Source of the DNA: Diadema antillarum
Lineage: Eukaryota
Direction of reading: 5' to 3'
Assembly (NCBI RefSeq): GCF_040938485.1
Contig: NW_027270931.1
Coordinates: forward strand, 1,364,001-1,428,000
DNA: 64,000 bases
The translations under genes were made by a program, and so were the position numbers. Position 1 is the first letter of the stretch. Each line of letters starts with the position of its first letter. This document shows positions 8,101-57,591 of the stretch, piece by piece. The notes under the pieces were generated by a model, which saw only the letters and a program-made list of their open reading frames with translations, was not told the origin of the DNA and made no database searches.

Positions 8101-8332
8101 CGTCATCAACTACTCGTGTGATGTCTTCATCCTTGGTGATGTCCATCTCCTTAATGAAGATTGTTTTATCAATAGCGTCCCCAACGGCGGCAACTAACTC
8201 GGCCTTTTCTGACATGGCAATGACGGTAGCGATGACAAGGTAGCGTTGATCGGGGTCTTGTGCGAGACGTCGAGCCGTAGAGAGCCCGATACCAGACGAA
8301 CATCCGGTCACGAGAACTACTTGAGGAGCCAT
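2173..8332 (-). CDS. SDR-1: classical short-chain dehydrogenase/reductase, RDH8/17-beta-HSD1-like, 288 aa; coding exons complement(8068..8332, 4732..4911, 3857..3950, 2173..2500)
   Basis: GT-AG junctions at all four exons give an 867-nt open frame. Motifs: TGCSSGIG, NIAG, helix NVN, catalytic Ser (VTSVAG) and YSASK. The exon structure is identical in four paralogs in this window. Confidence 0.92.
2551..2880. mobile_element. MITE in SDR-1 intron 3
   Basis: GGGAGCTTTAGA...GCGGACGTTTAA TIR inverted at 2839..2880; homology with SDR-2 intron 3 breaks at this point. Confidence 0.6.
5324..5454. repeat. Palindromic hairpin MITE core
   Basis: ~63-bp imperfect arms (…GCCACTGGTCTATTCAAC…) around a 3-nt loop. 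Confidence 0.7.
6130..6371. repeat. Palindromic-core MITE
   Basis: Hairpin 6239..6319 (GCAATATT repeats); short ATTGTAT terminal inverted ends. Confidence 0.55.
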
Positions 8333-9128
8333 GGTGACCACACGAAGTTCCCCGAGTTCTTTATATGAAGATAATACATGGAAACAAGTTTACCCGAATA
8401 GTTTAGCATTATCGCGGATTTGTTCATGGAAAGGTGAGATGTCGAAAAATTATTGATAATGGCATTTGAGACGAAATAAGTATAACCTGTACGAGAATGA
8501 CTCCCTGTCATTTAATTATCATAATATTTAACTTCACGCTATATAGCTGGTTAGGTTAAATGAATTATTTACCATTTGCAGATGAAACAAAAGCCAAGCT
8601 TTCGTGCTGCACGATTTTAAATGTGAACCTGCAGTCATGCAGGCTGGCCTTCTGATGTTACCACTTTCATTGAGAGATCCCATCCATTCAGAGAGACATG
8701 CATTGTTCCTTCACGATAACACTCAAATTTGGAAAAGTGTAATTTGTCATTGTTGTTTTTAAAGTTAATGTGCTCCGTTATGCATGACATTTGTCAACAT
8801 AATTAGGTATCATTGGAAAGAAGAAAAGTTTCTCTTTCCCCACAATCAACATTGCACTCTCCAGAGCTGACAATTTTGAAATATTAGCCCTCCAAATTTG
8901 GATTACATTTTTTTTTTGGGATACGCACTGTATATTCCTTTTCGTGAAGCCCGAATTCGTATTTGTCAATAAACAGGTGGTCCTCTACAGCAAAATAAAT
9001 AATATTCATCATAAATCCCGATATATTCAAAGCTAAATGAAAAAGATACACATAACGGCCCTAAGCTATCTAAATTCCGGCCTTCTTTCAAATTGAATGG
9101 AGCTATTTGGAACATGGTTGCCTATTCA

Positions 9129-19394: not shown

Positions 19395-22300
19395 TCATTC
19401 ATATATTCTTTCATTTTTTCCAATTGACTCGCGGATAACTTCGATAGACTTTTCTCCCGTCAGATCGGCAACGCTTTCTCTCATTGTATCCTCATCGTTC
19501 GACGAGGGAACGACCAGGTGTCTGAAAACCGGCTCGTCGATCTGCACGCATTTCGTCATCAAGACGTCGACCACGTCGTCCACGGAAAAGCCGGTGGATC
19601 CCAACAATGAGTCGTAAAAGCCTCTTAGTTGACGTCTATCGATGTCGTGAATGGTGTCGTCATTACTCTGGGCTGCTAGTTGAGACAAAGCCCATCTAAC
19701 TAGTCCCGTTTCCACCTTAGCAGGCTCGAACAGGCACACCCTAAAAATAAATTAACAATCTAATACGGTTTTAAACTGAACATACTGCTATATTACAAGT
19801 AACACAGTTGCGAACATGCACTAAATCGCACAAGATTGATCAACGGTCAAACAACGTTCCCTAGAAAGAGACCATGCCATGCCATGTCTAAGAGAAAATT
19901 AATTTCATTTCATTCCTTTTCATCTCATCTCATCTCATTTCATTTACCTAGCTAGATATAATTAATACCTTTTCCAACAATTATTCAATTGCAAATATAT
20001 ATACATGTATATATATGCACTCATAATTACATAAAACCAGCACAACATTGCAATCGATGAAAATACTGTGAATTGAAATAAAAAATTGATGGTTCAATAA
20101 TCAGAATTGAATATGTTGATAACTAAACAAAATATGAATGAAACAAATAACTAAAGAGATGAACGAATAAATCTGAATAATTACTTTACAGATACTGCCC
20201 AAAGTCATCTTAGTGAAGCTTAGTGCTTCTGTGACAGACCATGAATCAAAGGAAAAAAAATTAAAGAATCCTGAATACAAGGGTAAATGTTGATACAATA
20301 ATAAATCCAGAAATACATAGACAAAGACTACATGTTCAAAGCCACAAGAGCTTTAGAACAATCAATGGGACTCTATTAGCGAACGGAACTATTTCACAGT
20401 GCATTCAAAACTGTGTATTCATTTTATCCATTTACTGTAATTTGTAAATAAGAAATATGTAGATTATATACAGAATATAAGTGCATATCATATCGGTATT
20501 GCAAGACACAATAAACGGGATTTATAACTATGCATCTAAAACAGCTACCCTCTGTAAACCCTCCCCCCCCCCCACCAAAAAAAAGGCCAAAAATCAAGGG
20601 TATATGACTGTGCAAGCGATAGGGAGAAATACTTTAAAAAGTGTAAGGAATGATTATTTTTTTTTCCTTAAAAAATAATGTGGATTTTCTTAAATGTCAT
20701 CTTCATGTTGTTGTAAAATTCTTGTTGACGGTTCCTGGATTTAACAAAAACTTTACACAAATTCAGTATCGCTGTCCGTCTATATTCATAAATTTAGGTA
20801 TTTAATTATTTGGGCAAAAATACCCTACGACGATTTGTGTGGATTAAAATTACTTTAAGAGAAAACCATTGCTATTATCTTTACCTGATGTTGAATGACT
20901 TCACAGTGGAGAGCAGTGACTCAAAAAATCCCTCCAAGGCAAATTTGGAGGCGCAGTAGAAGTCGTGGTAAGGTATACCTTCAATTTAATGAAACAGTTC
21001 AATGTTGTGCCATTGAATGGAGTGGTTTAATTTTATATCACACATATATACATGATGATATAAATATGATATTATATACATATCATGTTTAAGTTCACTT
21101 AAATGAGGCAGTACAGTGTAATGCCATTGGCTGAAGGTAGTTTACCTTCGCTGCAGGTAATTCACGTTAAAAGTTTTTTCGTATTCATAGCCTCCAAAAG
21201 TAGTTACAACAATATACTTTTGAACGACGTTGGAAGGTGACTGAAGTCATCTTCAAACGTCATTTTTTTTTATTTGGTAATACTCATTAAAGGTCATGTT
21301 TACCATTGGGAACAGTCATTTCAAAAATATTTAAGATATGACATTTAATGCATATGTGTAGCTCTGTTGGGGGTTAGGATCACTGGAGGAGTTTTACCTT
21401 TACTAGGTGGCCCCCTCTGCCCCCTGGGAGTCCTAGACTGGTCTCCCCATATCCAGCACCATGAGTAGCGCAATACATGGGACCTAGTCCCAAAAAACAC
21501 CAGCTTCCCTCATGGTGAAGACCGACCATGTGCCTGTACGAGGCGCCCCTACCACGGCTGAACATGGCGGATCTACGGAAGACAACCCCAATAAAAAGCA
21601 TGCCACTCTGGGCTGGTGGAACCCTCAATCCTGAACACCTTGGTTGAAAATCTACCTCAGGAGAAGGTAACCTCTGACTTCAAAACCCGGGCAGGTGGAA
21701 CTCGTTAGCCTTGGCAGGCCATCCACCTAGGGACTTTGCTCACCTGAACCAGTTAACCAAGCCTGTTTGGGCGGACCAGGCGGAAGAAATGTTGTGTTTC
21801 AACCGCTGTGAACGCGACTCAGCAAAAGCACTGTGGAGCGCGAAGGGCAAGTCAGAGCACGAAAGAAGACCTGGCCATCCACTGCAGCCAACGAAGCCCC
21901 CAGACGTAACGGTATATTCGTGCCACTGGAACGTGACTTCTGAGGCCGAGAGAGTGGGTTTGCTCCAGTGCAACAGTTCTCCCACTTAAAACCCATTCAA
22001 GCACAGGCTACGTTGTGCTCTCTACGTCCCACGTAACCCAACTTCTGTAAAAGTCCTGCGGCGATGGAGGAGCGGTGAAGCAACAGGTGGAGGTGACCAC
22101 TGGCAGTTGTAGTCGCAATCCCACACGTAGGCGGTTCTGGACAAGTGGTCGCTCTTCTATGTACCCAGGGCAGCAGAGAAGTTCGGCAGCATCCAGGGTG
22201 ACTGAGCAGCCCTCTTTAGGATAGCACTGCTCACCCTAGTAAGGGAGGGGCCTAAAAAAGGTGGCCTAAACATTGCCTGCCCTACTGCATCTGGTCAGTT

Positions 22301-25300
22301 TACCGCGGCTGACAGGATCATCCAACTCAGCGGTCGAAATCAAATAAGGAAACAAACAGAAAGAAAAACAAAACTGCTTTTGGGAGCATGGAATGTCCGT
22401 ACCCTCATGGACAGAGATGATGCAGCAAGGCTGCAACGGAGAACAGCCCTAGTTGCCAAAGAGTTGTCACGCTACAACATTGATATTGCTGCCCTCAGTG
22501 AAACTCGGATTGCAGAGGACGGCTCAATCACAGAACCTACCACTGGCTACACCTTTTTCTGGAAAGGCAAAGCCAAAAAGGAAGACAGGATCCATGGAGT
22601 TGGCCTGGCTATAAAGACCAGTCTGATGAGACAAATTTCAGACCTACCCACTGGCATCAGTGAATGGCTTATGACATTACGCCTGCCCCTCAGTCATAAG
22701 CGACATGCAACAATCATTTAGTGCATATGCTCCAACGCTAACAAGTTCAGAAGAAGCAATCGAAGAGTTTTATGCCGACCTCAGTTCCATACTCAATACG
22801 ATCCCGGCCACTGACAAAATCATCCTTCTAGGAGACTTCAACGCTCGAGTAGGCAGCGACCATGGTCGATGGGACAGGGTTCTTGGTAGACATGGTGTTG
22901 GCAACATGAACAACAACGGCCTCCTGCTGTTGAGTAAGTGTGCTGAGGTTGACCTCGTCATTACAAACACAGTGTTCAGATTGGCAAACAAGTACAAGAC
23001 TACCTGGATGCATCCCAGATCAAAACAATGGCACCTGATGGACTATATCATTGTTCGACAGAGAGATCTCCGGGACGTCTATGTTACCAGGGTCATGCGA
23101 GGAGCTGAATGATGGACAGATCACAGACTTGTCCGCACCACCATGAACTTGCACATCGCTCCCCATCACCATAGACGACAAAAGCTTGTTCGTACTGCCT
23201 TCAACACAGCCAGACTCAAGCATCCTTTCGTCCTGCAGAAGTTCCAATCTAGGCTCAATGAAAAGCTGTCTTCCACTGGACCATTGAATGGAGACCCAAT
23301 GCAAAAGTGGAACAAGTTGAAAGAAGTGCTGACCGACGCTGCCAAGCTAGAGCTTGGCCTCAAGAAGCGACACCACAAGGAATGGTTTGATGAGAACAAT
23401 GCTGCCATCGATGAGCTGCTTGCCGAAAAGAAGAAGGCTTTCATGGAATGGCAGAACGACAATGACTCCATCTCTAAGAGGAACAGATTCAGGTCGTTAC
23501 AGAAAAAGGCCCAACAAAAACTGCGCAAAATGCAAGATCAATGGTGGGAGAAAAAAGCTGAAGAGATCCATAGTTTTGCTGACTCGAACCAATCTAAAGA
23601 GTTCTTCAGCTAAATCAAAGCAGTCTTTGGCCCTGTAAAATCAGGCTCCTGTCCATTGCTTTCAGCAGATGGAAACACCTTGATCAGGGACATGGCTGGC
23701 ATAAATGAGAGATGGAAGAAACACTTCAGTCAACTCCTGATCACTCGTCTGCAGTTGAACAAGCCGCACTTGATCAGGTCCCACAGCAAACAGTGAAAGA
23801 GGAACTTGATGTTCCCCCATCAATAGCCGAAGTCAAGAAAGCCATCAAACAGATGAAGCCAGGAAAGGCATCTGGCCACGGCGGTATTCCTGCAGAGGTG
23901 TACAAGGCACTCAGCGACCAGGCCTTTGAGGCATTCTACTATGTTCTTACCAGTATCTGGAATGAAGAAAAAATGCCAGCTGACTTGCGTGATGCCACTA
24001 TAGTTGCCTTATTCAAAAACAAAGGCTCAAGAGCAGACTGTGGAAACTACAGAGGCATATCCCTCTTGTCCATTGCCATAAAAATTCTTGCCCGTGTCAT
24101 TCTGAATAGGCTGATCTCCACAGTTGCAGAGAAAAACCTCCCTGAGACTCAGTGTGGTTTTCGACGCAATCGTAGTATAGTCGACATGGTCTTTGTTATG
24201 AGACATGTCCAGGAAAAGTGCATCGAGCAGAACATGAACCTCTATGCTGCCTTCATAGATCTATCAAAGGCAATCGACAGTGTGAACAGGGAAGCTCTCT
24301 GGACAATTCTAAGAAAACTTGGCTGTCCAGCAAAGTTCACTACACTCATTAGACTGTTCCATGAAAATATGACTGGTCAGGTTCTGTCAAACGGTAAACC
24401 ATCCGAAAAATTTGCCATCTCCAATGGTGTAAAGCAAGGTTGTGTGCTCGCCCCTGTGTTGTTGTGCAACCTCTTCTTCGCACAAGTCCTGTTCCACGCT
24501 GTCAGAGACCTTGACCTCGGCATCTACATCAGGTACAGATTAGATGAGTCGATGTTGGATCTGCGACGCCTTGCAGCAAAGACAAAGGTGCTGGAAAGGC
24601 TCATTCTTGAAGCTCTGTTCGCAAATGATTGTGCTCTGATGGCACAGGGAGAGAATCACCTACAGCTGATCGTCAACAAGTTCTCTGAAGCGTCGAAGAT
24701 GTTTGGCCTTACAGTCAGTCTCAGAAAGACAGAAGTCCTCCTCCAGCCAGCACCGAACAGTGCACCCTGCCAGCCAAGCATCACTGTTAATGGCACACAT
24801 CTTAAGAATGTCAAAAGCTTCAAACACCTGGGCAGTACGCTCTCCAGTGACGGTACTCTTGACAATGAAATAGCAGCAAGAATACAGATGGCCAGCTTGG
24901 CACTTGGAAGACTACGCACGAAAGTCCTACAACACAAAAACGTTCGCCTTCAACCAAACTCAAGGTGTACAACGCAGTTGTCCTGTCATCTCTGCTCTTC
25001 GGCTGCGAAACATGGACCCTGTACCGCAGGCATACCAAAAAGCTGGAACCGTTCCACATGCGCTCTCTGCGGTCCATTATGCATATTCGATGGCAAGATC
25101 GCATCACAAACCAAGAGGTCTTGGACAGAGCCAGGACATCAAGCATTGAAACCAAAATCCTCCAAGCTCAACTTCGATGGTCCGGTCATGTCATCCGCAT
25201 GGAAGAGTCAATAATCCCTCGTCAGCTCCTCTATAGCGAGCTGTCACAGGGCTATCGCAATCAAGGCCGTCCCAAGAAACGTTATAAAGACAATCTCAAG

Positions 25301-39078: not shown

Positions 39079-39629
39079 GGTGACCACACGAAGTTCATTC
39101 AATTCTTTTGAATAAACAGAATGCATGGGAACGCTAAGTGTTGTCGGGGAGTCGTTCATGTAAAGGTGAAATGTCCTTTTCACATGTATTATTGCTTTTG
39201 CCCCTTTTCCATACTACTTTTCTTCTCCTCCTCATCTTCATATCCTTTTCATAATCTTCTCTTTATTCGCCTTCTGATATGTCCTCGTAGTTTAAATATA
39301 CCACAAAGACTATCGTTTCTGTTCTATTCTCTGACAATTGGAGCGTCGTTGCAGTCATACGTTTCTGTTTATTCCCCCATTTTTCCTGCGTTGTTTAGTC
39401 TTCACTTCCTGCGTCCGTTCGCTTCTCAGTTACTACATCTGTAATACACTTCACAACAATGCCGACATCAAGAATGCGAGCAATTCAAAGTCCATTACTG
39501 GTTGGCAATGGAAACTCCTTATATCAATGCAAATCTGCAAGGACTACAACACGTCAAAAGAACAGAGCAACATCCACATATTAACTTATTCCAGGGAGGT
39601 GAGAGGGTCACCTCCCTGCTTATTCTTAC

Positions 39630-40331: not shown

Positions 40332-40629
40332 TATAAGAAGAATGAGTCTAAAATACGCCATCTGTAGATCCAACAAGAAGGTTTTTATTCTCAAAATTTT
40401 CAACCCGCCTTGGGCCTTCGTCAGTGTAGTGTATACTAGTACAATAATAAGAAAGTCTTTACAAACATGAATCATCATAACATCATAACAATACTCTGCA
40501 GAGCTTTGCAGAGCATTGTTATGATGTTATGTTGTTACGGGTTGAAAACGAGGCGGATTGAAAATTTTGTGAATGAAAACCTTCTTGTTGAATCTACATA
40601 TGGCGTATTTGAGACTCATTCTTCTTATA
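40332..40629. mobile_element. ~300-bp MITE with ~80-bp TIRs inserted in an (AT)n tract
   Basis: TATAAGAAGAATGAGTC…TTTTCAACCCGCC inverted at 40552..40629. Confidence 0.75.
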
Positions 40630-43209: not shown

Positions 43210-46200
43210 TTATACAGCCCCTATCAACTTGCGTAGTGCGGCGATAGATTTCTCCCCCGTCAGGTCGGCAACCGATTCTTCCAGGGCCTCCTTGGTCTCA
43301 GGGGGAGCGACCAGGTGTCTGAAAACCGGGTCTTCGACTTCAATGCATTTCGTAACCAAGACTTCGACCACGTCGTCTACTGAAAGAGCGGGGAACTTTG
43401 ACGCTAGGTCGCAAAGGAATTTTAGCTGTCGTCTGTCGATTTCGTGAATGGTGTCGTCATTAATCAGGGCATTGCGTGCTGACAAACCCGATGGTAACAT
43501 TCTTGTATTAACGAGAGTAGGTTCAATCATGCACACCCTGTTCAGAGTAAAATAAATAAAACACACATATCAAGTTAAACATACTTTCACTTTCCATAGT
43601 CATGTTTACAGCGACAGACAAACAGTAATAATATACATAAACTGTACACAGCAAGATTGTTGCTACTGAGTGGCAAAGTTTTGAAAATAGTTTGTATTAG
43701 TCTGTCGATCCAAGAGAAACAAAACTAAGCCGAATCTGGAATCTGTAAAATTCGATTAGATAGTATATTCTTAAGTATTAATTCTCTATTGAATCGAATC
43801 TAATCAAATATCAAGTATCTAAACAAATTCAATGAGAAAAGAATGAAGGGCTTTCTCAACCGAATCTGCACTTTCTACATAGAGGGGGATTCAATCTAGA
43901 GTTTACATTTGAATATATAGAAAGAATGCAACAATGTTAGTACTAAAGATTAGTGCAGATCGAAGGAAATCGAACAATCAATTAGAAAGATAATTTATGA
44001 CTTTAAAAAAATTTCGAGTGATCCATTTGACGCCATATCATGATAAGATTAGCACTGCATGTCCACTAACCATTAGCCAATAAAAATTCGTGATATCACA
44101 CAATTTCATTTTATTTTTCTGGCATGATGACAGTGCAATCCACGTGATAACATCTTTAAGGAAGCAGGGGAATATTATCCGTAGCATAATTATGTCAGTC
44201 AGAAGTACAAGGAATAAATACTTTCAATGAAAAAGAAATGGAATTCTCTCTACAATGATATAATTTTTTTTCTGTAAATCGTTGTCTACCCGTTACATCA
44301 TGAATTGTTATATTCCTCTAGATGGTGGCGCATGGATTTAATCAACAAGGTTAACGTTAGAAAACGGAACTTTTTGATATACTCCGTACCTGATATTGAA
44401 TGACTTGACAGTGGAGAGTAGTGATTCAAAGAATCCTTCTACGGCAAACTTAGAGGCGCTGTAGAAGTCACCGTAAGGCAAACCTGAAATTCGATGGACA
44501 TTTCTCGTTTATAAGAGGAGCTTGCTTCCAAAAGGCGCTAAACCCATCATTTTTCCATGGGTTTAGCGCCTTTTGGAAGCAATCTCTTCGAATACATGTA
44601 TTATAGTTATAATGTATAGATACACGCCTACCTCACATTTCAGATCTTCGTCCACATATCACTACTGGTTTCTCCAAAAATAAGTATAAATAAGTGAGTG
44701 CAAAACGATGGAACAATTAGCAAGACTGTAGGCATATTTGTTGAGTGAATTCAAGAAAGCTGTGAAACCTTCAAAGCTTTCCTATTTAAGGTGTGTGCTT
44801 ATGTTAATTTGTTATGTTAATCTGTGCTACCCACCAAGTTATTATCTTTTACTCTTTAACACAAAGGGACTGAAGCCAAATGCGCTACAAATGTGATGTT
44901 ATTATAATTGTCATTATTATTATAATTATCATTATTTTCATCATTATAATTATTATCATTATTATTATCATTATTATTGTTTCTATCACTTTTATTTTCA
45001 CGATGATACTATCACAAAGTCTTCTCATTATGTGATGTTTGGAGGGTTTGGATTAACAGTTAGGTCGAACCTGGATGTTATCAATGTACAATTTGGCGAG
45101 GGTACAATGTGTATGTGGGTTGTTCATTGTTGAGTTTTCTTTTTCTTTTTGTAGTAGAAAGGGGCGATGCAAATAAGATGAATGAGGCAAAGTGGAGACT
45201 GGAATTATCTAAGTGAGGTCCATGGTGAACTAGGTGAATGTAGTGGTCAATTATAAACTCAGATGTTTATAATTATTATTTACCAATAGGCATGTTTGGA
45301 ATGACGAAATTTGGCATAAATCTAGTACCTTGCTTTCCCGCCAAACTCGAGACACTGATGATTTTTCCCGCCTTTTTCTGCTTCATGTGAGGGAGTACCG
45401 CCTGAGTGAGTCGAATTGTGCCGATAGTGTTCACATTGAAGATGCTCTCGATCTTGGCACGAGACGCACGTTCTGGGAGATCTGTGGAAGGAACTCCCGC
45501 TATGTTGACTGAACAGAGATCAATATGAGAAAAGGAAATAAACATCACGAGTATCTCATCACAACGCAAATTTTTCAGTCTACCTGTGTCCATTTAAAAG
45601 TCACCAATGTACTGCGGATTTACTTCAGATGACGTCTACATGGCATTTTGACGTACGAAGTAAGCTAGCTTTAGATTCATCACAAGGGCAAAAAGAAAAA
45701 TAACAGCAATCTATGGGAAAAATGCAATGTACCGGTTGATCAGCAGGTTTTGGTCGAGGTATATGAACCTGACGATGGACAGATATTTGGTCAGAAACAA
45801 ACCAACGTATTGATGGACAGGATTAGTATGAATAGGAAAAAACAGCATCTCCAAAATCCAATGGTGATAAGTACTAGAGAGGTACATTCAAAATTGCGGA
45901 GGCCCCAATCACATATAAACACGGATCCTCAAGGATCCACACGGTAATCCGGGGAGATCCGGGGAGATCCGGGATAGTTCGACCTCGATGAAATGTCGAC
46001 GAGCGTTGATATGATATGATATGATACACACGGTATCAACACGGCAGCTACACGGATAAGACCGGAAGAGCCCGGCGTCTTCACGGACAAACACGGCATC
46101 TACACGGATCAACACGGCAGCTACACGGCAGCCACACGGACCATTCCGGATTGCTCTGCCAAGACGGCAATCCCCGGATGACACCGGATGTTTTTGACCT

Positions 46201-47714
46201 CCAAAAGTTGCCGTGTTGGCCTCCAGGATGTCCCCGGATCTACACGGACAAACACGGATATCCAAGGCGTGAACACGGGTCTCTCCCCGGATCCTGGGAG
46301 ATCCGGGAAGATCCTGGGAGATCCGGGAAGATCCTGGGAGATCCGGGAAGATCCGGGGAGATCCGGGATAGTTTCGACCTCGATGGAGTGTCGACAAGCG
46401 TTGATATGACTGTACACACGGCATCAACACGGCAGCTACACGGATAAGGCCGGAAGAGCGCGGCGTCTTCACGGACAAACCGTCCCGGATTGCTCTGCCA
46501 ACACGGCAATCCCCGGATGACGCCGGATGTTTTTGACCTCCAAAAGTCAAAAGTTGCCGTGTTGGACTCCCGGATGTCCCCGGATCTACACGGCCGGACA
46601 TACACGGATGTCCAAGGATGTTCAAGGCGTCAACACGGATCTCTCCCCGGATCATCCCGGATCAGATCCGGGATGGTCCGGGGTGATCCGGGACGTCTAT
46701 GTGACTGGGGCATTAGAGAAGAAAATTACACTTTCACAAGTCAGCTGCATGTTGTCATACTTCCTTCTCGATTGGCGTGATTGGAAGAATGTTTTACGAG
46801 CCTAATTTACTAAGTGTGCGATTCCACACCACGTTCAGTGGACTTTACTAGATTACTAGATACAGTATAGGATGAGATCAGAAACAGAATGTCAGGAATT
46901 CAGTCAAAATCACACTACTAAAAAGAAAATGAGGGTTCCGCTTTCATAGAGGGGAAGCGAATATAATTTTTGAAGTTTTGATATAGCCTGCGCCCGAATT
47001 CGGGTTGGTCTGTCATGGTTTGTCATAACGGCGGTAACAAAACACTGCAATACACCGAAATCTGCAAATAAATAGTTCATATCTGCACAAATCAGAAATG
47101 TTAACAAATTTTCCCACTTGAGATAAAACCAAAGCCAAAAACCTATAGTCTATGTATTGAGTCTACTGCCTTTAGAGGACTCAGGTAAGAAATAAAAGCG
47201 TTTAAACCTTTGAATATCAAAAATGCATTCCACTCGAAAAAGAGGAATAACCCAGTTCAGGTGAAATGCTGCCAGCTGCATTTTAGCGGCAATACCAACA
47301 GTGAAATAACAAGGTAATTAAGGTAAACCTGTGGATCTTTCTTTTCATTTTTCTGGCGAGAAATATACCCTGCCAAGTTCACAGGTCTAGGTCGAGAATA
47401 ACTACTGGTCGTGCAGTGACAGTAACTGTTGAGCCCAGCAATTACTCACTAAGAACATCGATGCCTCCGTGTGTCTTAATGACGTCATCAAGTACTCGTG
47501 TGATGTCTTCATCCTTGGTGATGTCCATCTCCTTGATGACGATTGTCTTGTCAATAGCGTCCCCAACGGCGGCAACTAACTCGGCCTTTTCTGCCATGGC
47601 AATGACGGTAGCGATGACAAGGTAGCGTTGATCGGGGTCTTGTGCGAGACGTCGAGCCGTAGAGAGCCCGATACCCGACGAACATCCAGTCACGAGTACT
47701 ACTTTAGGAGCCAT
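43210..47714 (-). CDS. SDR-4: RDH8/HSD17B1-like SDR, 288 aa; exons complement(47450..47714, 45329..45508, 44390..44483, 43210..43537)
   Basis: Canonical splice sites and the same exon sizes; TGCSSGIG, NIAG, VSSLAG, YSASK; ends LRKLIGAV*. Confidence 0.92.
44522..44582. repeat. Perfect 26-bp inverted repeat with a 9-nt loop
   Basis: TTGCTTCCAAAAGGCGCTAAACCCAT / ATGGGTTTAGCGCCTTTTGGAAGCAA. Confidence 0.9.
45902..46711. mobile_element. PIF/Harbinger-like non-autonomous element with internal GATCC(G/T)GGGA decamers and a duplicated ~350-400-bp unit, SDR-4 intron 1
   Basis: GCCCCA(A/G)TCACATA TIRs; absent from the homologous SDR-3 intron; no clear TSD. Confidence 0.55.
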
Positions 47715-48388
47715 GGTAACCTTATGAAGTTTACCGAGTTCTTTTGTGGTAAACAGAATGCACGGGAACATGTTAATCTCAATGTTTAATATTGTCGGGA
47801 GTCATTCATGTAATGATAAAATAATAATTTCACACGTTAATCATAATTGTTTTTGACCGGAAAGCGAGGCTGGTTAAGTTTATCATCCCTCATTTTATTT
47901 TCCATGTATTGCGCTTTTCTTCGCCTTCTCATTTTCATCTACCTTTCCTACATATTGTGTCTTCTTTCCATTCAACTGCTGATAGGCCTTCATAGTTTAA
48001 GTGTGCAAGTTAAACGTCATGTTCTCCTCTCTGACAACGGTCTGCTTAGATTTAATTGGAGCGTCGATTCAGTCAATACAGTACTGTTTATTCCCCCATT
48101 TCCTGCGATGTGAACTCTTCGCTTCTAGCCGTGCCCGTTCGCTTCTCAGTTTAATTTAGGCGCCTACTACCACTACTACACGATACATCTCTAACACTTC
48201 AAACCAATGACGACACCAAGAACGCGAGTAATCCAAAGTCCATCACATTATGTTGCATCTTTTTTACACGTACGCTGGCTTACAATGGTACCATCATATA
48301 AATATCTACGAATGCAAAAACACGGGTCTACAAACTACAATACGTCGAAAGAATAGAGCAGCATGCACGTATCAGAGTGTATTCTCAC

Positions 48389-48505
48389 CTGTTGCCGGTT
48401 GTATGGAACGGCAGTGCGATTTTGTGTGTGCACCGTCCGCTGTGCTTTTCACCAATGAGTAGAAGAGAATATTTTCGGCGAAATGACGTTTTAGTTTCAG
48501 CCGAC
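48389..48505 (-). other. Putative non-coding leader exon of SDR-4 (5' boundary approximate)
   Basis: GGCAACAG|GTGAG donor at 48389/48388; homologous to the other leader blocks. Confidence 0.6.
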
Positions 48506-49491
48506 TTCCATCGACCATGGAGTTAGTAGCCCTGAATCAACCTCAGGTCAACAGGACAGTACATCATTGCCAGATACCCGAGGGTTAAAGTCTATGTGTG
48601 CTTAACACATATTTTTAATCTGCCATAGCGTGAATATATGGTGTTTTATTGTGGGTTTTTTTTCTCATGTGTGACTTCGCGAACGCATCATAATACCTGA
48701 TGTGCGTGAAGACTTTCTCAATAGACATTCTGCAAGATTACGTTTACACACCAAAAAAGAAAAAGAAAAGAAAATCACTGTTACTCCTGCGTCGTAAATA
48801 AAATAATAAAATAAAATAAAAGTCAATATTTCATGTAGGTGAAAGAATGGAATACATGCAGCATCATAATATATCCATCTCTCATGACAAACAAGAACAT
48901 AAACACACTCACACGTACAAACAGAAAAAGAAGCACAGAAAAGGGGAGTGGCAGAAATAAATACTGATGAAGAGAAAAAAGAGCGACAGGGAGAGAGAGA
49001 GAAAGTATATAAGAGAGGGAGAGAGAGGGACGATAATGCAAAACGTGTGTTACGAAAAGTGTGTCTGTGTTTGTGTGTGCGTGTTTGTGTGAAAAATTGA
49101 GTTGTACTTTAAGGAAACCAAAACCCCAAGAGGAATGTGGATTGAGTGAAAGCAGCAACATTAGTAGAACACATGAGTGAAAGTTTGAGGACAATCGATG
49201 CAATAGATTAGTGTTTTCTGAACTTGGAAACTTCTGTTTAAAAAAGGAAATCATTTAACCCTTGAAGTCCTCAATATAACAATATGTAATGTTGCACGTT
49301 TATGTTATTTTTGTCTCTTATTGTATTTCATGAAGTAAGCTTAAACTTCTCTCTCATCTTTAGACCCATATTTTGTCTTTTTTTTTTGTACCGTTGATTA
49401 TTTCGGTTGCAGAATTTGTTTCTACAACTTACAAGAATGGTTGCTTTGATGTATGATCACCCTTTAAATTGGAAAAGCATTTTAGGAGATT

Positions 49492-50069
49492 AACGTTGTG
49501 ATGCAAATTTATGAAGTTCTTCCGTCGAGATGTTTTCATTGCAACTGATTGACAAATTGCCCTACATCGACGTAAATAAGCACTGAATTGATCAGTGTTT
49601 TAGTAGTAGCCATGATAAAAAATCATGGGCGTACATACTCGAGCAGGATTCGAACCCACGACCTCCTGATCACCGGACAGGCGTCACCTCCACTAGACCA
49701 CCGAGCTTTCGCCCGACAGCAAGTGTTGGTTCTAATCCTTATAGCATGCAGCGGGTACTGCTTTGTTATTCAAATTTATGAAGTTCTTCCGTCGAGATGT
49801 TTTCATTGCAACTGATTGACAAATTGCCCTACATCGACGTAAATAAGCACTGAATTGATCAGTGCTTTCAACACTTGCTGTCGGGCGAAAGCTCGGTAAT
49901 CTAGTGGAGATGACGCCTGTCCGGTGATCAGGAGGTCGTGGGTTCGAATCCTGCTCGAGTATGTACGCCCATGATTTTTTATCATGGCTACTACTAAAAC
50001 ACTGATCAATTCAGTGCTTATTTACGTCGATGTAGGGCAATTTGTCAATCAGTTGCAACGTTGTGATGC
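49492..50069. mobile_element. tRNA-derived SINE-like element in a direct-plus-inverted arrangement, flanked by a 13-bp direct repeat
   Basis: tRNA-like heads with A box TGGTCTAGTGG and B box GGTTCGAATCC at 49636..49707(-) and 49890..49961(+); 190-bp inverted arms 49539..49728 / 49869..50058 (3 mismatches); 94-bp direct repeat 49504..49597 / 49771..49864; AACGTTGTGATGC at 49492 and 50057. Confidence 0.8.
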
Positions 50070-51452: not shown

Positions 51453-52107
51453 GTGAGAAAACTATCTTTTTGTGTGTGTTTTTTTTTTTCAATGTGGGCC
51501 TACTGTGGGACCGTGATTTGCACTCGTTGTTACAGGACCCATGATCAGTCAGTGTATACATCATGTAAAAACAAATGGAAAATGTATTTCCCTTTTAATC
51601 CAAAGCAGGAGTTATCAAGCAGGAAGAACCAAATAAATGACAGTCATGTGTACTATGCAAGTATAGCCACCTATTATTACTATTATTGTTGTTATTAGTA
51701 TTAGTTTTGATATCAGTATTAGTATTATCATTATCATTATAATCATCATTACTACTACTACTACTACTACTACTACTATAAACTAATATTAGTCCTATGA
51801 TATTGGAGCTATCAGAGAAAATGAAAAAGGAGACAAGAAATGTAAGGAGAAGAAGAAATCAATTGAGTTGGAAAAAAGAAAGTGGATAAAAAACATATTT
51901 ACCAATCACAAAGTGTTGCTGTCAAGCATGTAAATGTTGTGTGAATGTAAATGAACCACTTTCACTTTAGGGCAATGTTCGTCCCTGACCTACACCATGA
52001 TTGGTACCTCAATCTAAACTTTTTATCCATTCAAAAAAAAAATGGTATCTTGCATTCTGTTTCATCATGTTCGTAGGAACGAACTTGGCGAACTTTATTT
52101 GGTTACT

Positions 52108-55100
52108 ATGGCTCCTCAAGTAGTACTCGTGACTGGATGTTCGTCTGGTATTGGGCTCTGTGCTGCTCGACGTCTCGCACAAGACCCCGATCAACGCTAC
52201 CTTGTCATCGCTACCGTCATTGCCATGGCAGAAAAGGCCGAGCTAGTTGCCGCCGTAGGGGACGCTATTGATAAGACGATCTTCATCAAGGAGATGGACA
52301 TCACCAAGGATGAAGACATCACACGAGTAGTTGATGACGTCGTTAAAACGCGCGGACGTATCGATATTCTCAGTGAGTAGGCCCTACTTTCATATCTGGT
52401 CTAAATATTCAGACCTTATTAACCCCGAAATGTCCAAATCAAGGAGGTTCAAGATCTGGAGTACAAAAACTGGATAGCCATTATTCATACGCTGCCAGTT
52501 TTGTTTGGATGGATAAAAGAATTCCATATACATTGTAGGTGCATCTGTGCTTTTACTGATCGGGATTTGATGCCACCACATTGTCTTACCTGCGTAAGAT
52601 TGCAACACCTTACATTAAGTAGATCAAATATGGAGGGGTTAATGAATGCTACAGAAAAAATCATTACAAGTTAAGCTTTGACTCTGGGCACATAAAGGGT
52701 TAATAGGTCTGTACTTGACAGGTTATAATATTTGTCGTCGCAAACAAAGCGAACAAAATACTGTCATTCCATTGTTGCTATTTAAAGAGACGGGATGGTG
52801 TCCTACCATCCCTGTGCATCATACGGTACAGTACTCATTGCAGTTCATGGTAGTAATCCCTTATGTTCGAATGACACTTTCAATTTTCAAAAAAAAAAAA
52901 ACCTTTTGACTGTTATATTTGACTGATGCTTATGAATAAGCAACACACTTTAGGAAATGTATAAATACAGTTCTCATTATTTTTTACGGATTCAGTGCGA
53001 TGTGATGTAATCTTTGTTCAAGACAAAATATGCGGTGAAAATCAAGGGTGCTCTGACGTCATCCTTGTTTTGTCTGTTTGTTCATCTTTTTATTTTTTAT
53101 TTTTTAATTAATCCAAAGCATGCCATGATGTAATGATGATTCGTATAGGTGCAAAGGCAACGCCCATGTCATCTGAAGTGGAATTGAAAAGTCTTACCCG
53201 GTAGATTTGAAATGCTTTGCCTTGACGAACTGCTCGAGATGTATTATATAGATCATTGAAACATTTTTCATGTATCCATTTTTTCAGTCAACGTAGCAGG
53301 AATTGCTATCATAGGAGTCCCGGAGCGCGTGTCACGTGCCAGGATCGAGAGCATCTTTAACGTGAACACTATCGGAACAATTCGACTCACTCAGGCGGTA
53401 CTCCCTCACATGAAGCAGAAAAAGGCGGGAAAAATCATCAGCGTCTCGAGTTTGGCGGGAAAGCAAGGTACGAGAATAAAGTTTCGTGCATGAATAATTG
53501 TTGCCAAACTACTTCATTCCGAACTTGCCATCTTTGGAAAATTATGCAAATTTGATTTTGTGAAAGATTAGTATTTTGTATGTTGATACTTTGCTCTAAA
53601 TGTATCTCTCCTGAAATGCCCTGCTGTTTGACAAAAAATTACGCCAATGCAATATAAATAGCGCCAGCCAAAAGTAAATTGATGACAATGAGGTTTAACT
53701 GAAGTAGTCTTCGTATCAACATCTTCTTTGACCATTGACGTAGCTACATGCAGACGAATCGTAGCATAAGAAAACGATTTGCTTTCAATGAAAAAAAAAA
53801 AAACAAAATGAGTTAGCAACGTGTTAAACGATGGCTTTCAGGCGATGCATTTTCCACACCGGCCAATTTACGTCACTACACTTTTCTGGAGACTTTACAT
53901 CCACAAATTATAAACGTACTATCATTTTTGCACTAGAAGTAGAGAGGGTGAAATTTGTGAAAATTTCAGCATCAGTAAATATTCCTCGTTTAGATTAAGG
54001 TGCTTAGTCAAGGTTTATTCTGCTTAACATTATTGTTATCATCATTATCTCTATATCAAAGCTGGATGATATGTTTTAATTACCATACCTACCGTGTACT
54101 TCAAATCGCAGGTGTGCCTTATGGTGAATTCTACAGCTCTTCCAAATTTGCCGTGGAAGGGTTCTTCGAATCGCTTCTCTCTACTGTCAAATCATTCAAT
54201 CTCAGGTAACAGCCAGGTGAAATATTTATGCCAGTATAATTCACCGGTACAGCCCCTGTTCATTAAGAGCAGGGCAATCATTTATTAGAACTAAAAATGG
54301 ATCGTTTTGTTGAATGATTATTTGTCTGAACTTAGGATTGTTCACAATTGGTTTCGTGTTTGTTTGTTTGCTGTTGGTGTTGTTCGTGTTGTTGGTGTTG
54401 TTGTTTGTTTGTTGTTGTTGGGGTTTTTTTTTTTGGGGGGGGGTGGGGAGGGTATGTTACAAAACGAGGCCAAAATGTATAATTCTAAAGGTAAATCAGA
54501 GCATCTTGATTAAAATCGGTTTGAAAATGAATGAGATAACCAAAGTAAGTCATCATCATCCTTGCCATATCAAAATGGTGTTCCAATCTCTCAATCCGGA
54601 TTTTAAACGGAAGGTGAGAAATCGCTGTATGTTCGGAAAAGCTCATTTCGTCTTGAAAATGTTAATTTTGTTTCTGTATTAATGAAGTCATGAAGCTGTC
54701 GAGTTACCCCTGGATTCGAGCTTCGTGCCAATGTTATGTTAGATATAAAGTCTAAATACGGTATAAACCTCCTATATGACCAGATTATTATTTGTGCAGT
54801 TTATTCACAAGACAATGTCCATCTGTTTTCATCAGTTTGGGACGATCAAACAATAGGAAGTACAGTTCGACCTCGATTATCTGGCCTCCTTTTATCCGGA
54901 AATCTCTATTATCCGGACGCCTTCACGCATTGAAGGACTTTTCATCCAAAAATTGAGAAAAAAACAGTGACTTTAACATCTTTTCATGGATCTATTTCAC
55001 TAATTTCATAAGATGTGCATGATAGGTTTCTCAATATCTAATGAGGTAAAACATGTATGATTTTCACATAAAGATAAACTTTATTTTTGTGAAGAAGGGA

Positions 55101-57591
55101 CTACAATTTTGCGCAGGCTTACATAGATTACACCACCGTTGCGGGGTACGCTACCTGCCTAGCTGCCAGTGCACTGGGACGGCAGCTTGGACGGCAGCTA
55201 TATACATTAACATTGTGTCTCCCAAATCCGGCCAATTCGCTTATCCGGATGAGCGCCGGTCCCGACATGGCCGGATAATCGAGGTCGAACTGTAAATGCT
55301 TCTACCAACCTTAAGTAATTGTACTAAAAACTTTCATCGGCTGGGGATGATGATAAATTAAATGACTGAGCTTCAACCAACCTTGAATTGTAGAGGGCAA
55401 GCTTTCGTCCTGCTCCTGAGGACTTTCTCAAGCCTTATGCAGTGGAGTGTTGTCTTGCTGCCGTTGCCTGTCTTTGTTAATCACTGGACCATAGATTGGT
55501 GAAAGGGTATAGCCCGAGTCTCTGTTGAGAGCAGGATTGACCCTTCTGATCCAAAGTGCTTCCTTTATTTTTCTTTTCAACCAGTTGCTTTCAAAGTCAA
55601 TGATACGCGCCTCATCCCATTCAATGTTGTGTCCTGTGTTGTAAGAGTGCTCAGCTATCGCCGAGTGTGATGGATTGTTTTAGTCTCAGCGCCCTTTTGT
55701 GTTCCTTGAGTCTCTCGTTCAAGGTTCTGCTGGTTTCCCCGATGTAACAATCATGGCAATCAGCACAAGTGATCTTATAGACAATGCCTGACCTTATTTG
55801 CCTTGGGACTTTGTCTTTAGCATGGACTAGTCTACTTCTCAGGGTATTAGAGCTCTTGAATGCAATATCAACATCCTTGTTGTGGAATGCTCTTTTCAGA
55901 AGGGAGGATATGGTGTTTACGAAGGGGAGGACTACCCTAATGCTAGTCTCCTTCCTTTCCTTTGTGGGTGACTTAGTTCTTGTTTTGTCCTTGGCTTTTT
56001 GTCTCATCCAAGCTGGGTATCCACATGCTGTAAGGGCCTTGTCAATATGGTGGAATTCACTCTGTAGTGCATCATTGTCAGAGGTTACATTTCGAGCTCT
56101 CAAATACAAAGATCTAGCAAACACTCAACACAAAGGAGTTTGACATTGACATTGACTTTGAAAGCAACTGGTTAAAAAGAAAAATAAAGGAAGCACTTTG
56201 GATCAGAAGGGTCAATCCTGCTCTCAACAGAGACTCGGGCTATACCCTTTCACCAATCTATGGTCCAGTGATTAACAAAGACAGGCAACGGCAGCAAGAC
56301 AACACTCCACTGCGTAAGGCTTGAGAAAGTCCTCAGGAGCAGGACGAAAGCTTGCCCTCTACAATTCAAGGTTGGTTGAAGCTCAGTCATTGAATTTAGT
56401 AATTGTGCTGGCTAGCTTTCCTCCACTCCTTTAGACTTCTTCAGGCCAAATGGTTACACCGTTTCTCTTTCACTGCCTGCCTGTCTCCTGATCACTGGAC
56501 CGAAGATCGGTGATAAATAAGTATCCCTAATCCCTATTGAGCGTGGGCTTCATTATCTTAACTAAGATGGACTCTTTCACTTGTCAACACAAAACACAAA
56601 ATAGGATGGAATGACGCCACGGCCGCAGTCCTAGTCAATTGAAAGGAATATTTGGCCAAGAAAAGTGAAAGAATGCATCTGGATTAAGAGAATTAAGCCC
56701 ACACTTAGGATTCGAGATACACTTTATCACCGATATTCGGTCCAGTGCTCAGGACACTAGCAGGCAAAACAAGAGAAACGGTGCAATCACTTGGCCTGAA
56801 GAAGTCCACAGGAGTTGACGAAAGCTAGCCAGCAAGTCACTAAAAGATTGGGAGAAGCCTTAACCTCTTATTGAATGTCCATCTCATTACAAAAATTAGA
56901 CTTTTCCAAAAAGTATTTGTCAAAAAGCAATGCATTACTCTACCATTACTGACGTGGGAAGTCAGGAGAAGATATTTCAAGTCGTTCAGACACTTTATGA
57001 AAGATATCTTTAGCTTGGTGATTGCGTTGTACTGAACTTGACTGAGATAAGTTTGAAAATTAAGGCTACAAGATCACTTTCAAGATGTCTCCTGGCGTGA
57101 CCTCTTAATAACGATTAGCCTGTTGTGGGTAGGTCTTCTTGTTTGTGTCTGTGTGTGTTTGTGTTTGTGTGTGTGTGTGTGTGTGTGTTTCTGAGTGTGG
57201 TGTGTGGAACACGTCAGTTGCAGTATCTTTAGTTCCAATTGAGCTGATTATTATTTTCTCTAGGATTTGCATGATGGAGACTACTCAAGTAAAGACAAGA
57301 CTAGTGACAGGAGTTTTCTCGGACATTGACACCCAGATCAACGACGATACCATTGACGACATTGATCGACGTCAACTACGCTGCCTTCTTGACGTATTGA
57401 AAGAATTCCCCTTCATTTCAGTAGACGACGTGGTCGACGTCATGATAACGAAATGCGTCGAGGTCGACGACCCAGTTTTCAGACACCTGGTCGTTCCCCC
57501 TGAAACCAAGAAGGCGCTGATTGAAACCGTTGCCGACCTGAAGGGGGAAAAGTCAATCGTGGCACTGCGAAAGTTCATAAAGGCGTCATAG
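52108..57591 (+). CDS. SDR-5: RDH8/HSD17B1-like SDR, 288 aa, inverted relative to the others; exons 52108..52372, 53288..53467, 54112..54205, 57264..57591
   Basis: Canonical splice sites and the same exon sizes; TGCSSGIG, NVAG, VSSLAG, YSSSK; ends LRKFIKAS*. Confidence 0.92.
54861..55294. mobile_element. Tc1/mariner (pogo/Tigger-like) MITE with TA TSD
   Basis: TACAGTTCGACCTCGATTATC … GATAATCGAGGTCGAACTGTA perfect TIRs. Confidence 0.85.
55396..55434 (-). ncRNA. Hammerhead variant motif (U3-A8 core), PLE-A 3' pseudo-LTR
   Basis: Identical to 56318..56356 on the opposite strand, at the end of the GIY-YIG ORF. Confidence 0.6.
56318..56356 (+). ncRNA. Hammerhead variant motif (U3-A8 core), PLE-A inverted arm
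   Basis: GGC-TTGAGAA-A-GTCCT(CAGGAGC)AGGAC-GAAA-GCTT-GCC. Confidence 0.6.
56410..56447 (-). ncRNA. Degenerate hammerhead motif in the other PLE-B arm
   Basis: GGC-CTGAAGA-A-GTCTAAAGGAGTGGAG-GAAA-GCTA-GCC; stem II is broken by mutations. Confidence 0.5.
56793..56830 (+). ncRNA. Minimal type I hammerhead ribozyme motif (canonical CUGAAGA core, one extra A), PLE-B
   Basis: GGC-CTGAAGA-A-GTCCACAGGAGTTGAC-GAAA-GCTA-GCC; stem I extends to TTGGC/GCCAG; palindromic AGCT stem III; CUA cleavage triplet. Confidence 0.7.

What the first reader, a model, noticed from the sequence alone, without database searches (positions are those of the whole stretch)
55354..56834. Four hammerhead-ribozyme motifs from two Penelope families packed into one intron of SDR-5; the two sense-strand motifs share a dimerisation palindrome
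Seen: PLE-A carries GGC-UUGAGAA-A-stemII-GAAA-GCUU-GCC (55396- and 56318+); PLE-B carries GGC-CUGAAGA-A-stemII-GAAA-GCUA-GCC (56410- and 56793+). Established: Penelope pLTRs encode minimal type I hammerheads whose palindromic stem III lets them cleave as dimers, and C3-G8 is a tertiary pair that can covary to U3-A8. Inference: the two plus-strand motifs lie in the SDR-5 pre-mRNA about 475 nt apart. Both have the AGCU palindrome and a GGC/GCC stem I, so they could form a cis heterodimer between different families and cut the intron co-transcriptionally. The 249-bp and ~150-bp inverted arms compete by sequestering each motif in dsRNA, which would give a cleavage-versus-hairpin switch.
Basis: partly seen in the sequence, partly recalled or inferred. 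Interest (0 to 1): 0.7.

Follow-up and report, generated by a model that had tools for sequence, protein, structure and literature searches.

The report
Nested Penelope retroelement stubs with hammerheads
The four hammerhead-ribozyme motifs are real, but they are the usual baggage of two truncated Penelope-like retrotransposon insertions, one nested in the other, in a dehydrogenase-gene intron, and nothing supports a ribozyme switch acting on the host gene.

Summary
Observation confirmed. Four minimal type I hammerhead motifs lie at 55396-55434(-), 56318-56356(+), 56410-56447(-) and 56793-56830(+). They sit inside inverted arms of 249 nt (98.8% identical) and about 180 nt (80-86%).

They belong to two related Penelope-like element (PLE) families.
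- Family A is young. It has at least 136 exact motif copies, and tandem 2.5-kb units carry an intact reverse transcriptase plus GIY-YIG open reading frame. It uses the U3-A8 core.
- Family B is older and uses C3-G8.

Every feature matches the min-HHR of Cervera and De la Pena 2014: an extra base before helix II, a 6-bp helix II, no loop 3, an AGCU palindrome, and pairs on opposite strands.

The packing comes from nesting. PLE-A (55323-56397, 9-bp target-site duplication AGTAATTGT) inserted into the tail of B's left arm. It is absent from a collinear 94-98% copy of the locus on contig C880.

The host-intron claim holds by paralogue homology: intron 3 of the fifth SDR gene, 54207-57263.

The cis-heterodimer/switch idea is unsupported.
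- AGCU is the default palindrome in this genome (about 2900 motifs against about 270 with ACGU).
- Forcing the double hammerhead costs about +180 kcal/mol against the hairpin fold.
- The antisense arms are transcribed first.
- No RNA runs were listed.

The scan has already found the same kind of feature many times on other DNA of this genome. Ordinary, new members of a known kind.

The parts
54105..54206 (+). Exon 3 of the fifth SDR gene (YxxxK active-site exon), followed by a GT donor at 54207
   Evidence: tblastn to paralogue exons; splice sites read; weak adh_short match, E 0.0035
54207..57263 (+). Intron 3 of SDR-5 (about 3.06 kb, against 0.8-1.35 kb in the four paralogues), holding all the insertions
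   Evidence: Exon positions by paralogue homology; GT...AG borders. No RNA evidence was available
54862..55293 (.). MITE-like DNA transposon with 26-nt terminal inverted repeats (96% complementary) and a TA duplication, inserted in the outer tail of PLE-B's left arm. Absent from the C880 copy
   Evidence: Inverted repeat I5; empty site in L014
55314..55322 (.). Left copy of the 9-bp target-site duplication AGTAATTGT of the PLE-A insertion
   Evidence: a single copy is present at the empty site in C880
55323..55353 (-). One-sided tail extension of PLE-A. It continues into the start of the next tandem unit, including its ATG
   Evidence: blastn to full-length unit L025: window 55322-55934 matches L025 611-1 at 97.7%; L025 sequence
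55354..55602 (-). Left arm of PLE-A: C-terminal end of the endonuclease coding region, a stop codon UAA directly before helix I, the hammerhead, and the 3' tail
55396..55434 (-). Family A min-hammerhead (U3-A8 core), minus strand
55603..56120 (-). 5'-truncated, frameshifted GIY-YIG endonuclease coding fragment of PLE-A
   Evidence: Pfam GIY-YIG, E 8e-5; 97.5% identity to unit L025 positions 2346-3108 with 2 gaps
56121..56149 (.). 29-nt junction filler between the two head-to-head PLE-A copies
   Evidence: Unmatched to the unit
56150..56397 (+). Inverted, 5'-truncated second copy of the PLE-A 3' end (right arm)
56318..56356 (+). Family A min-hammerhead (U3-A8), sense in the SDR-5 pre-mRNA. Predicted cut after U56353
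56398..56406 (.). Right copy of the target-site duplication AGTAATTGT. It is itself part of PLE-B's left-arm tail
56406..56585 (-). Main part of PLE-B's left arm. Its tail continues at 55294-55322 and about 54826-54861, beyond the two later insertions
56410..56447 (-). Family B min-hammerhead, decayed (G at 11.1, helix II disrupted)
56660..56870 (+). PLE-B right arm (endonuclease C-terminal remnant, hammerhead, tail). The end point is approximate
56793..56830 (+). Family B min-hammerhead (C3-G8), sense in the pre-mRNA, with one C.U mismatch in helix II. Predicted cut after A56827
57264..57590 (+). Last exon of SDR-5, with an open frame running to a stop

Best explanation
The region is a stack of transposon insertions in intron 3 of the fifth gene of a tandem short-chain dehydrogenase array.

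First, an older Penelope-like element (family B) landed as a head-to-head pair of 5'-truncated 3' ends. Later a young family A element inserted into the tail of B's left arm, in one event. It also arrived as a head-to-head pair: a 0.8-kb endonuclease-plus-tail fragment and a 248-nt inverted copy. It made a 9-bp target-site duplication and carries a one-sided tail extension. A small TA-flanked MITE followed nearby.

Each PLE 3' end carries, just after the stop codon of its reverse transcriptase/endonuclease reading frame, the minimal type I hammerhead typical of metazoan PLEs. So two inverted pairs give four motifs, two on each strand.

The hammerheads belong to the retroelements' own life cycle. 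Their proposed role is processing of tandem PLE transcripts as dimers (inferred from the literature, not shown here).

In the host pre-mRNA the motifs are most likely inert. Each sense motif is complementary to an arm transcribed before it and would be locked into a long hairpin.
For: Motifs and arms.

PLE identity:
- GIY-YIG fragment in the window.
- Tandem 2531-nt units elsewhere in the genome carry an 844-codon open frame with RVT_1 and GIY-YIG domains. The same hammerhead lies between the stop and the next ATG.
- The window copy is 97-98% identical to that unit.

Abundance: at least 195 first-look tail candidates for family A and at least 197 for family B. Exact motifs: 136 and 50 against 0 in controls.

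Nesting and youth:
- C880 is collinear with window 21952-64000 at 94-98% identity. It has the B pair but lacks A and the MITE.
- The AGTAATTGT duplication flanks the whole A structure.
- The two A arms differ at 3 of 249 positions.

Architecture matches published PLE features: an inverted 5'-truncated copy adjacent to the 5' end and a one-sided 30-40 bp tail (PMC8557442); a PLE protein that cleaves and extends both strands in vitro (PMC11167929); and insertion into or beside older PLE copies (PMC6765202).

Hammerhead features match the published min-HHR, including U3-A8 and opposite-strand pairs 100-700 bp apart (PMC4209133).

Genome-wide counts by positions 3 and 8: C-G 1961, U-A 724, C-A 170, U-G 51.

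Hairpin sequestration.
Against: No RNA data were available. Transcription of SDR-5, the folding of the intron and any cleavage are therefore untested.

Whether C880 is the other haplotype or a recent segmental duplicate was not settled.

Nearest-neighbour energies ignore tertiary contacts, helicases and co-transcriptional kinetics.

Single-event origin of the B pair was not tested, because no target-site duplication was sought for B.

Hammerhead conservation within family B is only slightly higher than in the flanks: majority fraction 0.92, against 0.89 upstream and 0.80 downstream.
Confidence: 0.9

Rival explanations
1. The two plus-strand motifs (A at 56318, B at 56793) pair through AGCU and GGC/GCC into a cis heterodimeric double hammerhead that cuts the SDR-5 intron co-transcriptionally. 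The inverted arms act as a competing hairpin, giving a switch.
For: Both motifs have complete catalytic boxes, AGCU, and GGC/GCC flanks. A nested double-hammerhead pairing can be drawn and has a negative energy in isolation, -15.0 kcal/mol. Dimer-dependent cleavage is the accepted mode for such motifs.
Against: - Enforcing that fold costs +180 kcal/mol in the 55300-56900 RNA.
- The complementary arms are transcribed first. In a snapshot ending at 56400, A(+) is already fully paired.
- Trans helix I is only 3 bp on each side, and B(+) has a helix II mismatch.
- Sharing AGCU is the genome-wide default.
- The A insertion is missing from the second locus copy.
- Published min-HHR dimers cleave poorly in vitro. 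No reads ending at the hammerhead site were found for an active PLE.
Confidence: 0.03
2. The biologically relevant property is the long intronic hairpin, not the ribozymes. The 249-bp, 98.8% complementary arms form double-stranded RNA in the pre-mRNA. That RNA feeds small-RNA or editing pathways, or disturbs splicing of SDR-5 on the chromosome that carries the insertion.
For: The predicted fold pairs the arms completely: -882.5 kcal/mol for 1601 nt. The insertion roughly doubles the intron length relative to the paralogues.
Against: No expression, small-RNA or editing data exist for it. The insertion is young and not shared with C880, so no selection can be inferred. The splice sites lie 866 to about 1100 nt from the insertion.
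Confidence: 0.06
3. A chimeric retrozyme-like unit. Cleavage at both sense motifs would release a 474-nt RNA (56354-56827) that could circularise and be mobilised.
For: There are two same-strand hammerheads in direct orientation within the size range of animal retrozymes (literature).
Against: The A+B composite occurs nowhere else. The hit lists share only this locus, and C880 has B alone. There are no tandem direct repeats. The interval consists of decayed PLE-B arms. The sequestration problem is the same as for the first rival.
Confidence: 0.01

Closest known systems
Minimal hammerhead ribozymes (min-HHR) of metazoan Penelope-like elements (Cervera and De la Pena 2014, PMC4209133; dimer cleavage by Lunse, Weinberg and Breaker as cited in PMC6765202)
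   Same: - Type I topology, with no helix III loop.
- Palindromic 15.2-16.2.
- An unpaired base between A9 and 10.1.
- A G10.1-C11.1 pair.
- A long helix II (6 bp) and a short helix I (3-5 bp).
- Location in the pLTR just after the RT-EN reading frame.
- The U3-A8 core variant.
- Frequent opposite-strand pairs 100-700 bp apart.
   Different: Nothing of kind. These are further families in another genome, which earlier scan notes call a sea urchin (not tested here). Family A has sub-variants with a bulged C or U in helix II. Activity was not tested.
Canonical endonuclease-positive PLE insertion architecture (Craig et al. 2021, PMC8557442; PAc in vitro system, PMC11167929)
   Same: 5' truncation, an inverted 5'-truncated copy adjacent to the 5' end, a one-sided tail extension of about 31 bp, a short target-site duplication, tandem full-length units elsewhere in the genome, and insertion into an older PLE.
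   Different: Here the target is the tail of a different but related PLE family, which puts two families' motifs side by side.
Animal non-LTR retrozymes (Cervera and De la Pena 2020, PMC7229834; Li et al. 2026 preprint)
   Same: They carry type I hammerheads related to PLE pLTRs, and their hammerheads act as dimers.
   Different: Retrozymes are non-coding tandem direct repeats that yield circular RNAs. This locus has inverted pairs with a coding remnant and no tandem array.
Rfam hammerhead families
   Same: From my own knowledge, not tested here: these families (Hammerhead_1, Hammerhead_3, HH9, HH10, Hammerhead_II) share the same catalytic core boxes.
   Different: No match at E<=10. My reading, from knowledge and not tested, is that those models include a closed helix III.

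Membership tests
PLE minimal type I hammerhead (min-HHR) | Catalytic boxes: C3/U3-U4-G5-A6-N7-G8/A8-A9, G12-A13-A14, A15.1/U16.1, H17 | tested here: met
   All four motifs have them. Family A has UUGAGAA...GAAA...CUU and family B has CUGAAGA...GAAA...CUA.
PLE minimal type I hammerhead (min-HHR) | C3-G8 pair kept, or covaried to U3-A8 | tested here: met
   Family B is C-G and family A is U-A. Genome counts are C-G 1961, U-A 724, C-A 170 and U-G 51. The copies are related by descent, so these counts are not independent events. Most listed C-A cases belong to one family whose N7 is C, which fits CpG decay.
PLE minimal type I hammerhead (min-HHR) | One unpaired nucleotide between A9 and 10.1 | tested here: met
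   An A is present in all four motifs. The feature is described in PMC4209133.
PLE minimal type I hammerhead (min-HHR) | G10.1-C11.1 closing pair and a long helix II | tested here: met
   A(+) and A(-): GUCCUC/G(C)AGGAC, 6 bp with a bulged C. B(+): 5 of 6 pairs. B(-) fails, with G at 11.1. Three of four motifs meet the feature.
PLE minimal type I hammerhead (min-HHR) | No loop 3, with palindromic 15.1-16.1 (AGCU) allowing a helix III between two copies | tested here: met
   AGCU in all four. AGCU is also the majority form in this genome: about 2906 motifs against 273 with ACGU.
PLE minimal type I hammerhead (min-HHR) | Location in the pLTR/3' tail of an element encoding RT and GIY-YIG EN | tested here: met
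   Family A: the window fragment has GIY-YIG, and full unit L025 has RVT_1 plus GIY-YIG with the hammerhead between the stop and the next ATG. Family B: only an endonuclease C-terminal remnant and tail homology to A were seen.
PLE minimal type I hammerhead (min-HHR) | Helix II differs between families through compensatory changes | tested here: met
   Family A has GUCCUC/GAGGAC and family B has GUCCAC/GUGGAC, a U-A to A-U change. By eye, roughly a dozen other families listed have different, self-complementary helix II sequences. No formal covariation statistic was computed.
PLE minimal type I hammerhead (min-HHR) | Mg-dependent self-cleavage, as a dimer | not testable with these tools
   No RNA runs were listed. 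The literature reports low activity in vitro.
Canonical EN+ PLE insertion | 5' truncation, an adjacent inverted 5'-truncated copy, a one-sided 30-40 bp tail, and a target-site duplication | tested here: met
   compared with PMC8557442.
Rfam hammerhead families | Score at or above the family threshold | tested here: not met
   No hammerhead hit at gathering score or at E<=10. This shows that the library models do not cover the minimal form. It is not evidence against the motif.
Animal non-LTR retrozyme | Non-coding tandem direct repeats, each with a hammerhead | tested here: not met
   The pairs are inverted, a coding remnant is present, and there is no tandem array.

The most novel reading that the evidence does not exclude
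Hammerheads from different PLE families that end up on the same strand of a host intron can transiently form heterodimeric double hammerheads during transcription and cut the host pre-mRNA. Nested PLE insertions would then create allele-specific, self-cleaving introns.
Probability: 0.03. Interest if true: 0.6.

Novelty: new member of a known kind. Interest (0 to 1): 0.15.

Why it matters
As it stands, this is an annotation point. Intronic clusters of minimal hammerheads in this genome mark nested Penelope-like insertions and should not be read as host ribozyme switches.

Three results have modest value:
- A young, high-copy family with an intact reading frame carries the U3-A8 core. This suggests that variant is compatible with recent retrotransposition.
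- Genome-wide counts show positions 3 and 8 strongly coupled.
- The locus offers a presence/absence pair (C43 against C880). That pair could serve as a natural control for any effect of a long intronic hairpin on splicing.

Tried and rejected
- Rfam scans at gathering score and at E<=10 gave no hammerhead. I judge this a limit of the models, not evidence against the motif.
- An RNA-seq search listed no runs, so read laying was not used and no in vivo ends, editing or splicing could be checked.
- I first took the 31 nt at 55323-55353 for filler copied from nearby target DNA. I rejected that once the full unit showed it to be the normal continuation of PLE-A into the next tandem unit. The resemblance to 54826-54850 is homology between the A and B tails.
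- A per-column conservation test of family B showed only a weak excess of conservation in the hammerhead (0.92 against 0.89 and 0.80). I do not use it as evidence of selection.
- The Lunse et al. paper is not held, so it is cited only through a review.
- The N run at 29225-29352 was left alone.
- The organism name was not tested. Earlier scan notes say sea urchin.
Full report
**What is in the sequence**

- Family A: GGC-UUGAGAA-A-GUCCUC-AGGA-G(C)AGGAC-GAAA-GCU-U-GCC, at 55396-55434(-) and 56318-56356(+).
- Family B: GGC-CUGAAGA-A-helix II-GAAA-GCU-A-GCC, at 56410-56447(-) and 56793-56830(+).

The arms are real.
- 55354-55602 against 56150-56398 is 249 nt with three mismatches.
- 56406-56517 against 56723-56834 is 86% complementary.
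- 56540-56585 against 56660-56705 is 80% complementary.

The exact family A pattern occurs 136 times in the 1.75-Gb assembly, against 0 for the reversed control. Family B occurs 50 times against 0.

The copies are not equal in quality.
- B(-) has G at 11.1 and two non-pairs in helix II.
- B(+) has one C.U mismatch relative to the family form GUCCAC-AGGA-GUGGAC.
- Both A copies match a common subfamily with a bulged C in helix II. Other subfamilies have a U there, or no extra base.

Rfam finds no hammerhead here at any threshold. My reading, from knowledge and not tested, is that its models include a closed helix III, which these motifs lack.

**What the elements are**

The 547 nt between the A arms encode, on the minus strand, a frameshifted GIY-YIG endonuclease fragment. 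The last part of that reading frame runs into the arm and stops at a UAA directly before helix I.

Elsewhere the family A tail has at least 195 first-look candidates, and the scored full-length matches are 96-98% identical. They include tandem copies spaced 2531 nt apart. One such unit (L025) has an 844-codon open frame with RVT_1 and GIY-YIG domains. The same hammerhead lies between the stop codon and the next ATG. The window copy is 97-98% identical to that unit.

Family A is therefore a young, canonical, endonuclease-positive Penelope-like element. Family B is an older relative: most copies are 77-83% identical to the window copy. It has a homologous tail and a remnant of the endonuclease C-terminus.

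**Why four motifs are packed together**

Contig C880 carries a collinear copy of window 21952-64000 at 94-98% identity. It may be the other haplotype or a recent duplicate; this was not settled.

That copy has the B pair but lacks PLE-A, and it also lacks a 432-bp TA-flanked MITE. The empty site defines PLE-A as 55323-56397, flanked by the 9-bp duplication AGTAATTGT at 55314-55322 and 56398-56406. The target is PLE-B's own left-arm tail, a few bases beyond B(-)'s cleavage site.

The A insertion consists of four pieces:
- a 5'-truncated copy, 55354-56120(-);
- a 31-nt extension into the next tandem unit, 55323-55353;
- a 29-nt junction, 56121-56149;
- an inverted 248-nt copy of the 3' end, 56150-56397(+).

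The duplication flanks the whole structure. The two arms are closer to each other (98.8%) than to other copies (about 97%). The structure therefore arose in one event.

This is the published PLE architecture: an inverted 5'-truncated copy next to the 5' end, and a one-sided tail of 30-40 bp (PMC8557442). A PLE protein cleaves and extends both target strands in vitro (PMC11167929). PLEs tend to insert into or next to older copies (PMC6765202). The link from both-strand priming to the head-to-head structure is my inference.

**Host gene**

The window holds five paralogous SDR genes. Exon 1 matches adh_short at E 1.5e-12.

For the fifth gene, on the plus strand, paralogue homology places the exons as follows:
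- exon 1 at 52078-52379;
- exon 2 at about 53283-53483;
- exon 3 at 54105-54206;
- the last exon from 57264.

The borders are GT and AG, the codon phase is consistent, and the frame is open to a stop.

Intron 3 is about 3.06 kb here, against 0.8-1.35 kb in the paralogues. The difference is of the size of the insertions. "One intron of SDR-5" is therefore supported by homology, without RNA evidence. I did not build a joined spliced model.

**Comparison with what is known**

Cervera and De la Pena 2014 define the metazoan PLE min-HHR by features that are all seen here:
- no helix III loop;
- palindromic 15.2-16.2;
- a conserved extra base between A9 and 10.1;
- a G10.1-C11.1 pair;
- a long helix II and a short helix I.

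They also report the U3-A8 core covariation (about 1300 hits in one genome), pairs on opposite strands 100-700 bp apart, and low cleavage even as dimers.

In this genome, a descriptor of the form YUGANRA-A-G...C-GAAAGCUH gives these counts by positions 3 and 8: C-G 1961, U-A 724, C-A 170 and U-G 51, against reversed controls of 4-12. The C-A class is mostly one family whose N7 is C, which fits CpG decay. The counts reflect family expansions, not independent events. Even so, several distinct families carry each paired form.

Helix II differs between families through compensatory changes. Family A has U-A where family B has A-U, and many other self-complementary variants appear.

**The heterodimer and switch idea**

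Sharing AGCU is not informative. About 2906 motifs in this genome use it, against 273 (control 54) with ACGU.

A double hammerhead needs helix I in trans. Between A and B this is only GGC/GCC, 3 bp on each side.

In the nearest-neighbour model the A+B double hammerhead is worth -15.0 kcal/mol on its own. The minimum-energy fold of the plus-strand RNA 55300-56900 is -882.5 kcal/mol. In that fold 39 of 39 bases of A(+) pair with 55396-55434, and 33 of 38 bases of B(+) pair with 56410-56447.
- Keeping both motifs free costs +150 kcal/mol.
- Enforcing the double hammerhead costs +180 kcal/mol.

The complementary arms lie upstream and are transcribed first. In a snapshot ending at 56400, A(+) is already fully paired.

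The arrangement is absent from C880, so it is not conserved. For an active lizard PLE, hammerhead cleavage was not needed for insertion in vitro, and no RNA-seq reads ended at the site.

I therefore give the switch about 3%. The energies ignore tertiary contacts, proteins and kinetics. No RNA runs were listed for this sequence, so this remains a computational argument.

**Verdict**

The naming of the motifs is correct. The functional reading is not supported.

The locus is a textbook nested Penelope-like insertion. Its hammerheads are new members of a known kind.

Earlier notes of this scan describe the same kind of feature many times elsewhere in this genome, with the same conclusion. They also call the organism a sea urchin, which I did not test.

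Noticed in passing
window 54862-55293: A 432-bp MITE-like element with 26-nt terminal inverted repeats (96% complementary, starting CAGTTCGACC) and a TA duplication. It is inserted in PLE-B's outer tail and is absent from the C880 copy, so it is recent or polymorphic.
   Followed up: partly
G000:C880:267000-304574 against window 21952-64000: A collinear second copy of the whole SDR array at 94-98% identity, differing by several insertions and deletions. This fits an assembly that keeps both haplotypes (my guess; 1.75 Gb in 2963 contigs). Haplotype or segmental duplicate was not settled.
   Followed up: partly
window 45624-50057: About 4.4 kb is represented by only about 330 bp in C880 (only matches of 400 bp or longer were listed). 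It holds exon 1 of the fourth SDR gene (47443-47744) and an inverted pair of near-identical tRNA-like sequences (49635-49707 minus, 49890-49962 plus). The tRNA-like sequences score 36 and 33 bits in Rfam and have mismatched acceptor stems.
   Followed up: no
window about 32240-32290 (-): A fifth well-formed min-hammerhead from a third family. It has a U3-A8 core (UUGAGAA), a 6-bp helix II, an ACGU palindrome and a 4-bp helix I.
   Followed up: no
window about 40380-40590: A decayed opposite-strand pair of min-hammerhead-like motifs about 120 nt apart, with AAUU in place of AGCU. It is probably another PLE foldback stub.
   Followed up: no
window 3775-8389, 19442-28726, 34268-39213, 43222-47801, 52078-57590: A tandem array of five SDR paralogues, four on the minus strand and the fifth on the plus strand. 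Exon 1 copies are 91-93% identical to that of the fifth gene.
   Followed up: partly
window 13916-15181 (-): A 422-codon open frame whose sequence looks like part of a reverse transcriptase (judged by eye; no family search was run).
   Followed up: no
G000 family A copies: Family A hammerheads fall into three sub-variants of helix II: no extra base, a bulged U, or a bulged C. All keep the rest of the motif identical.
   Followed up: no
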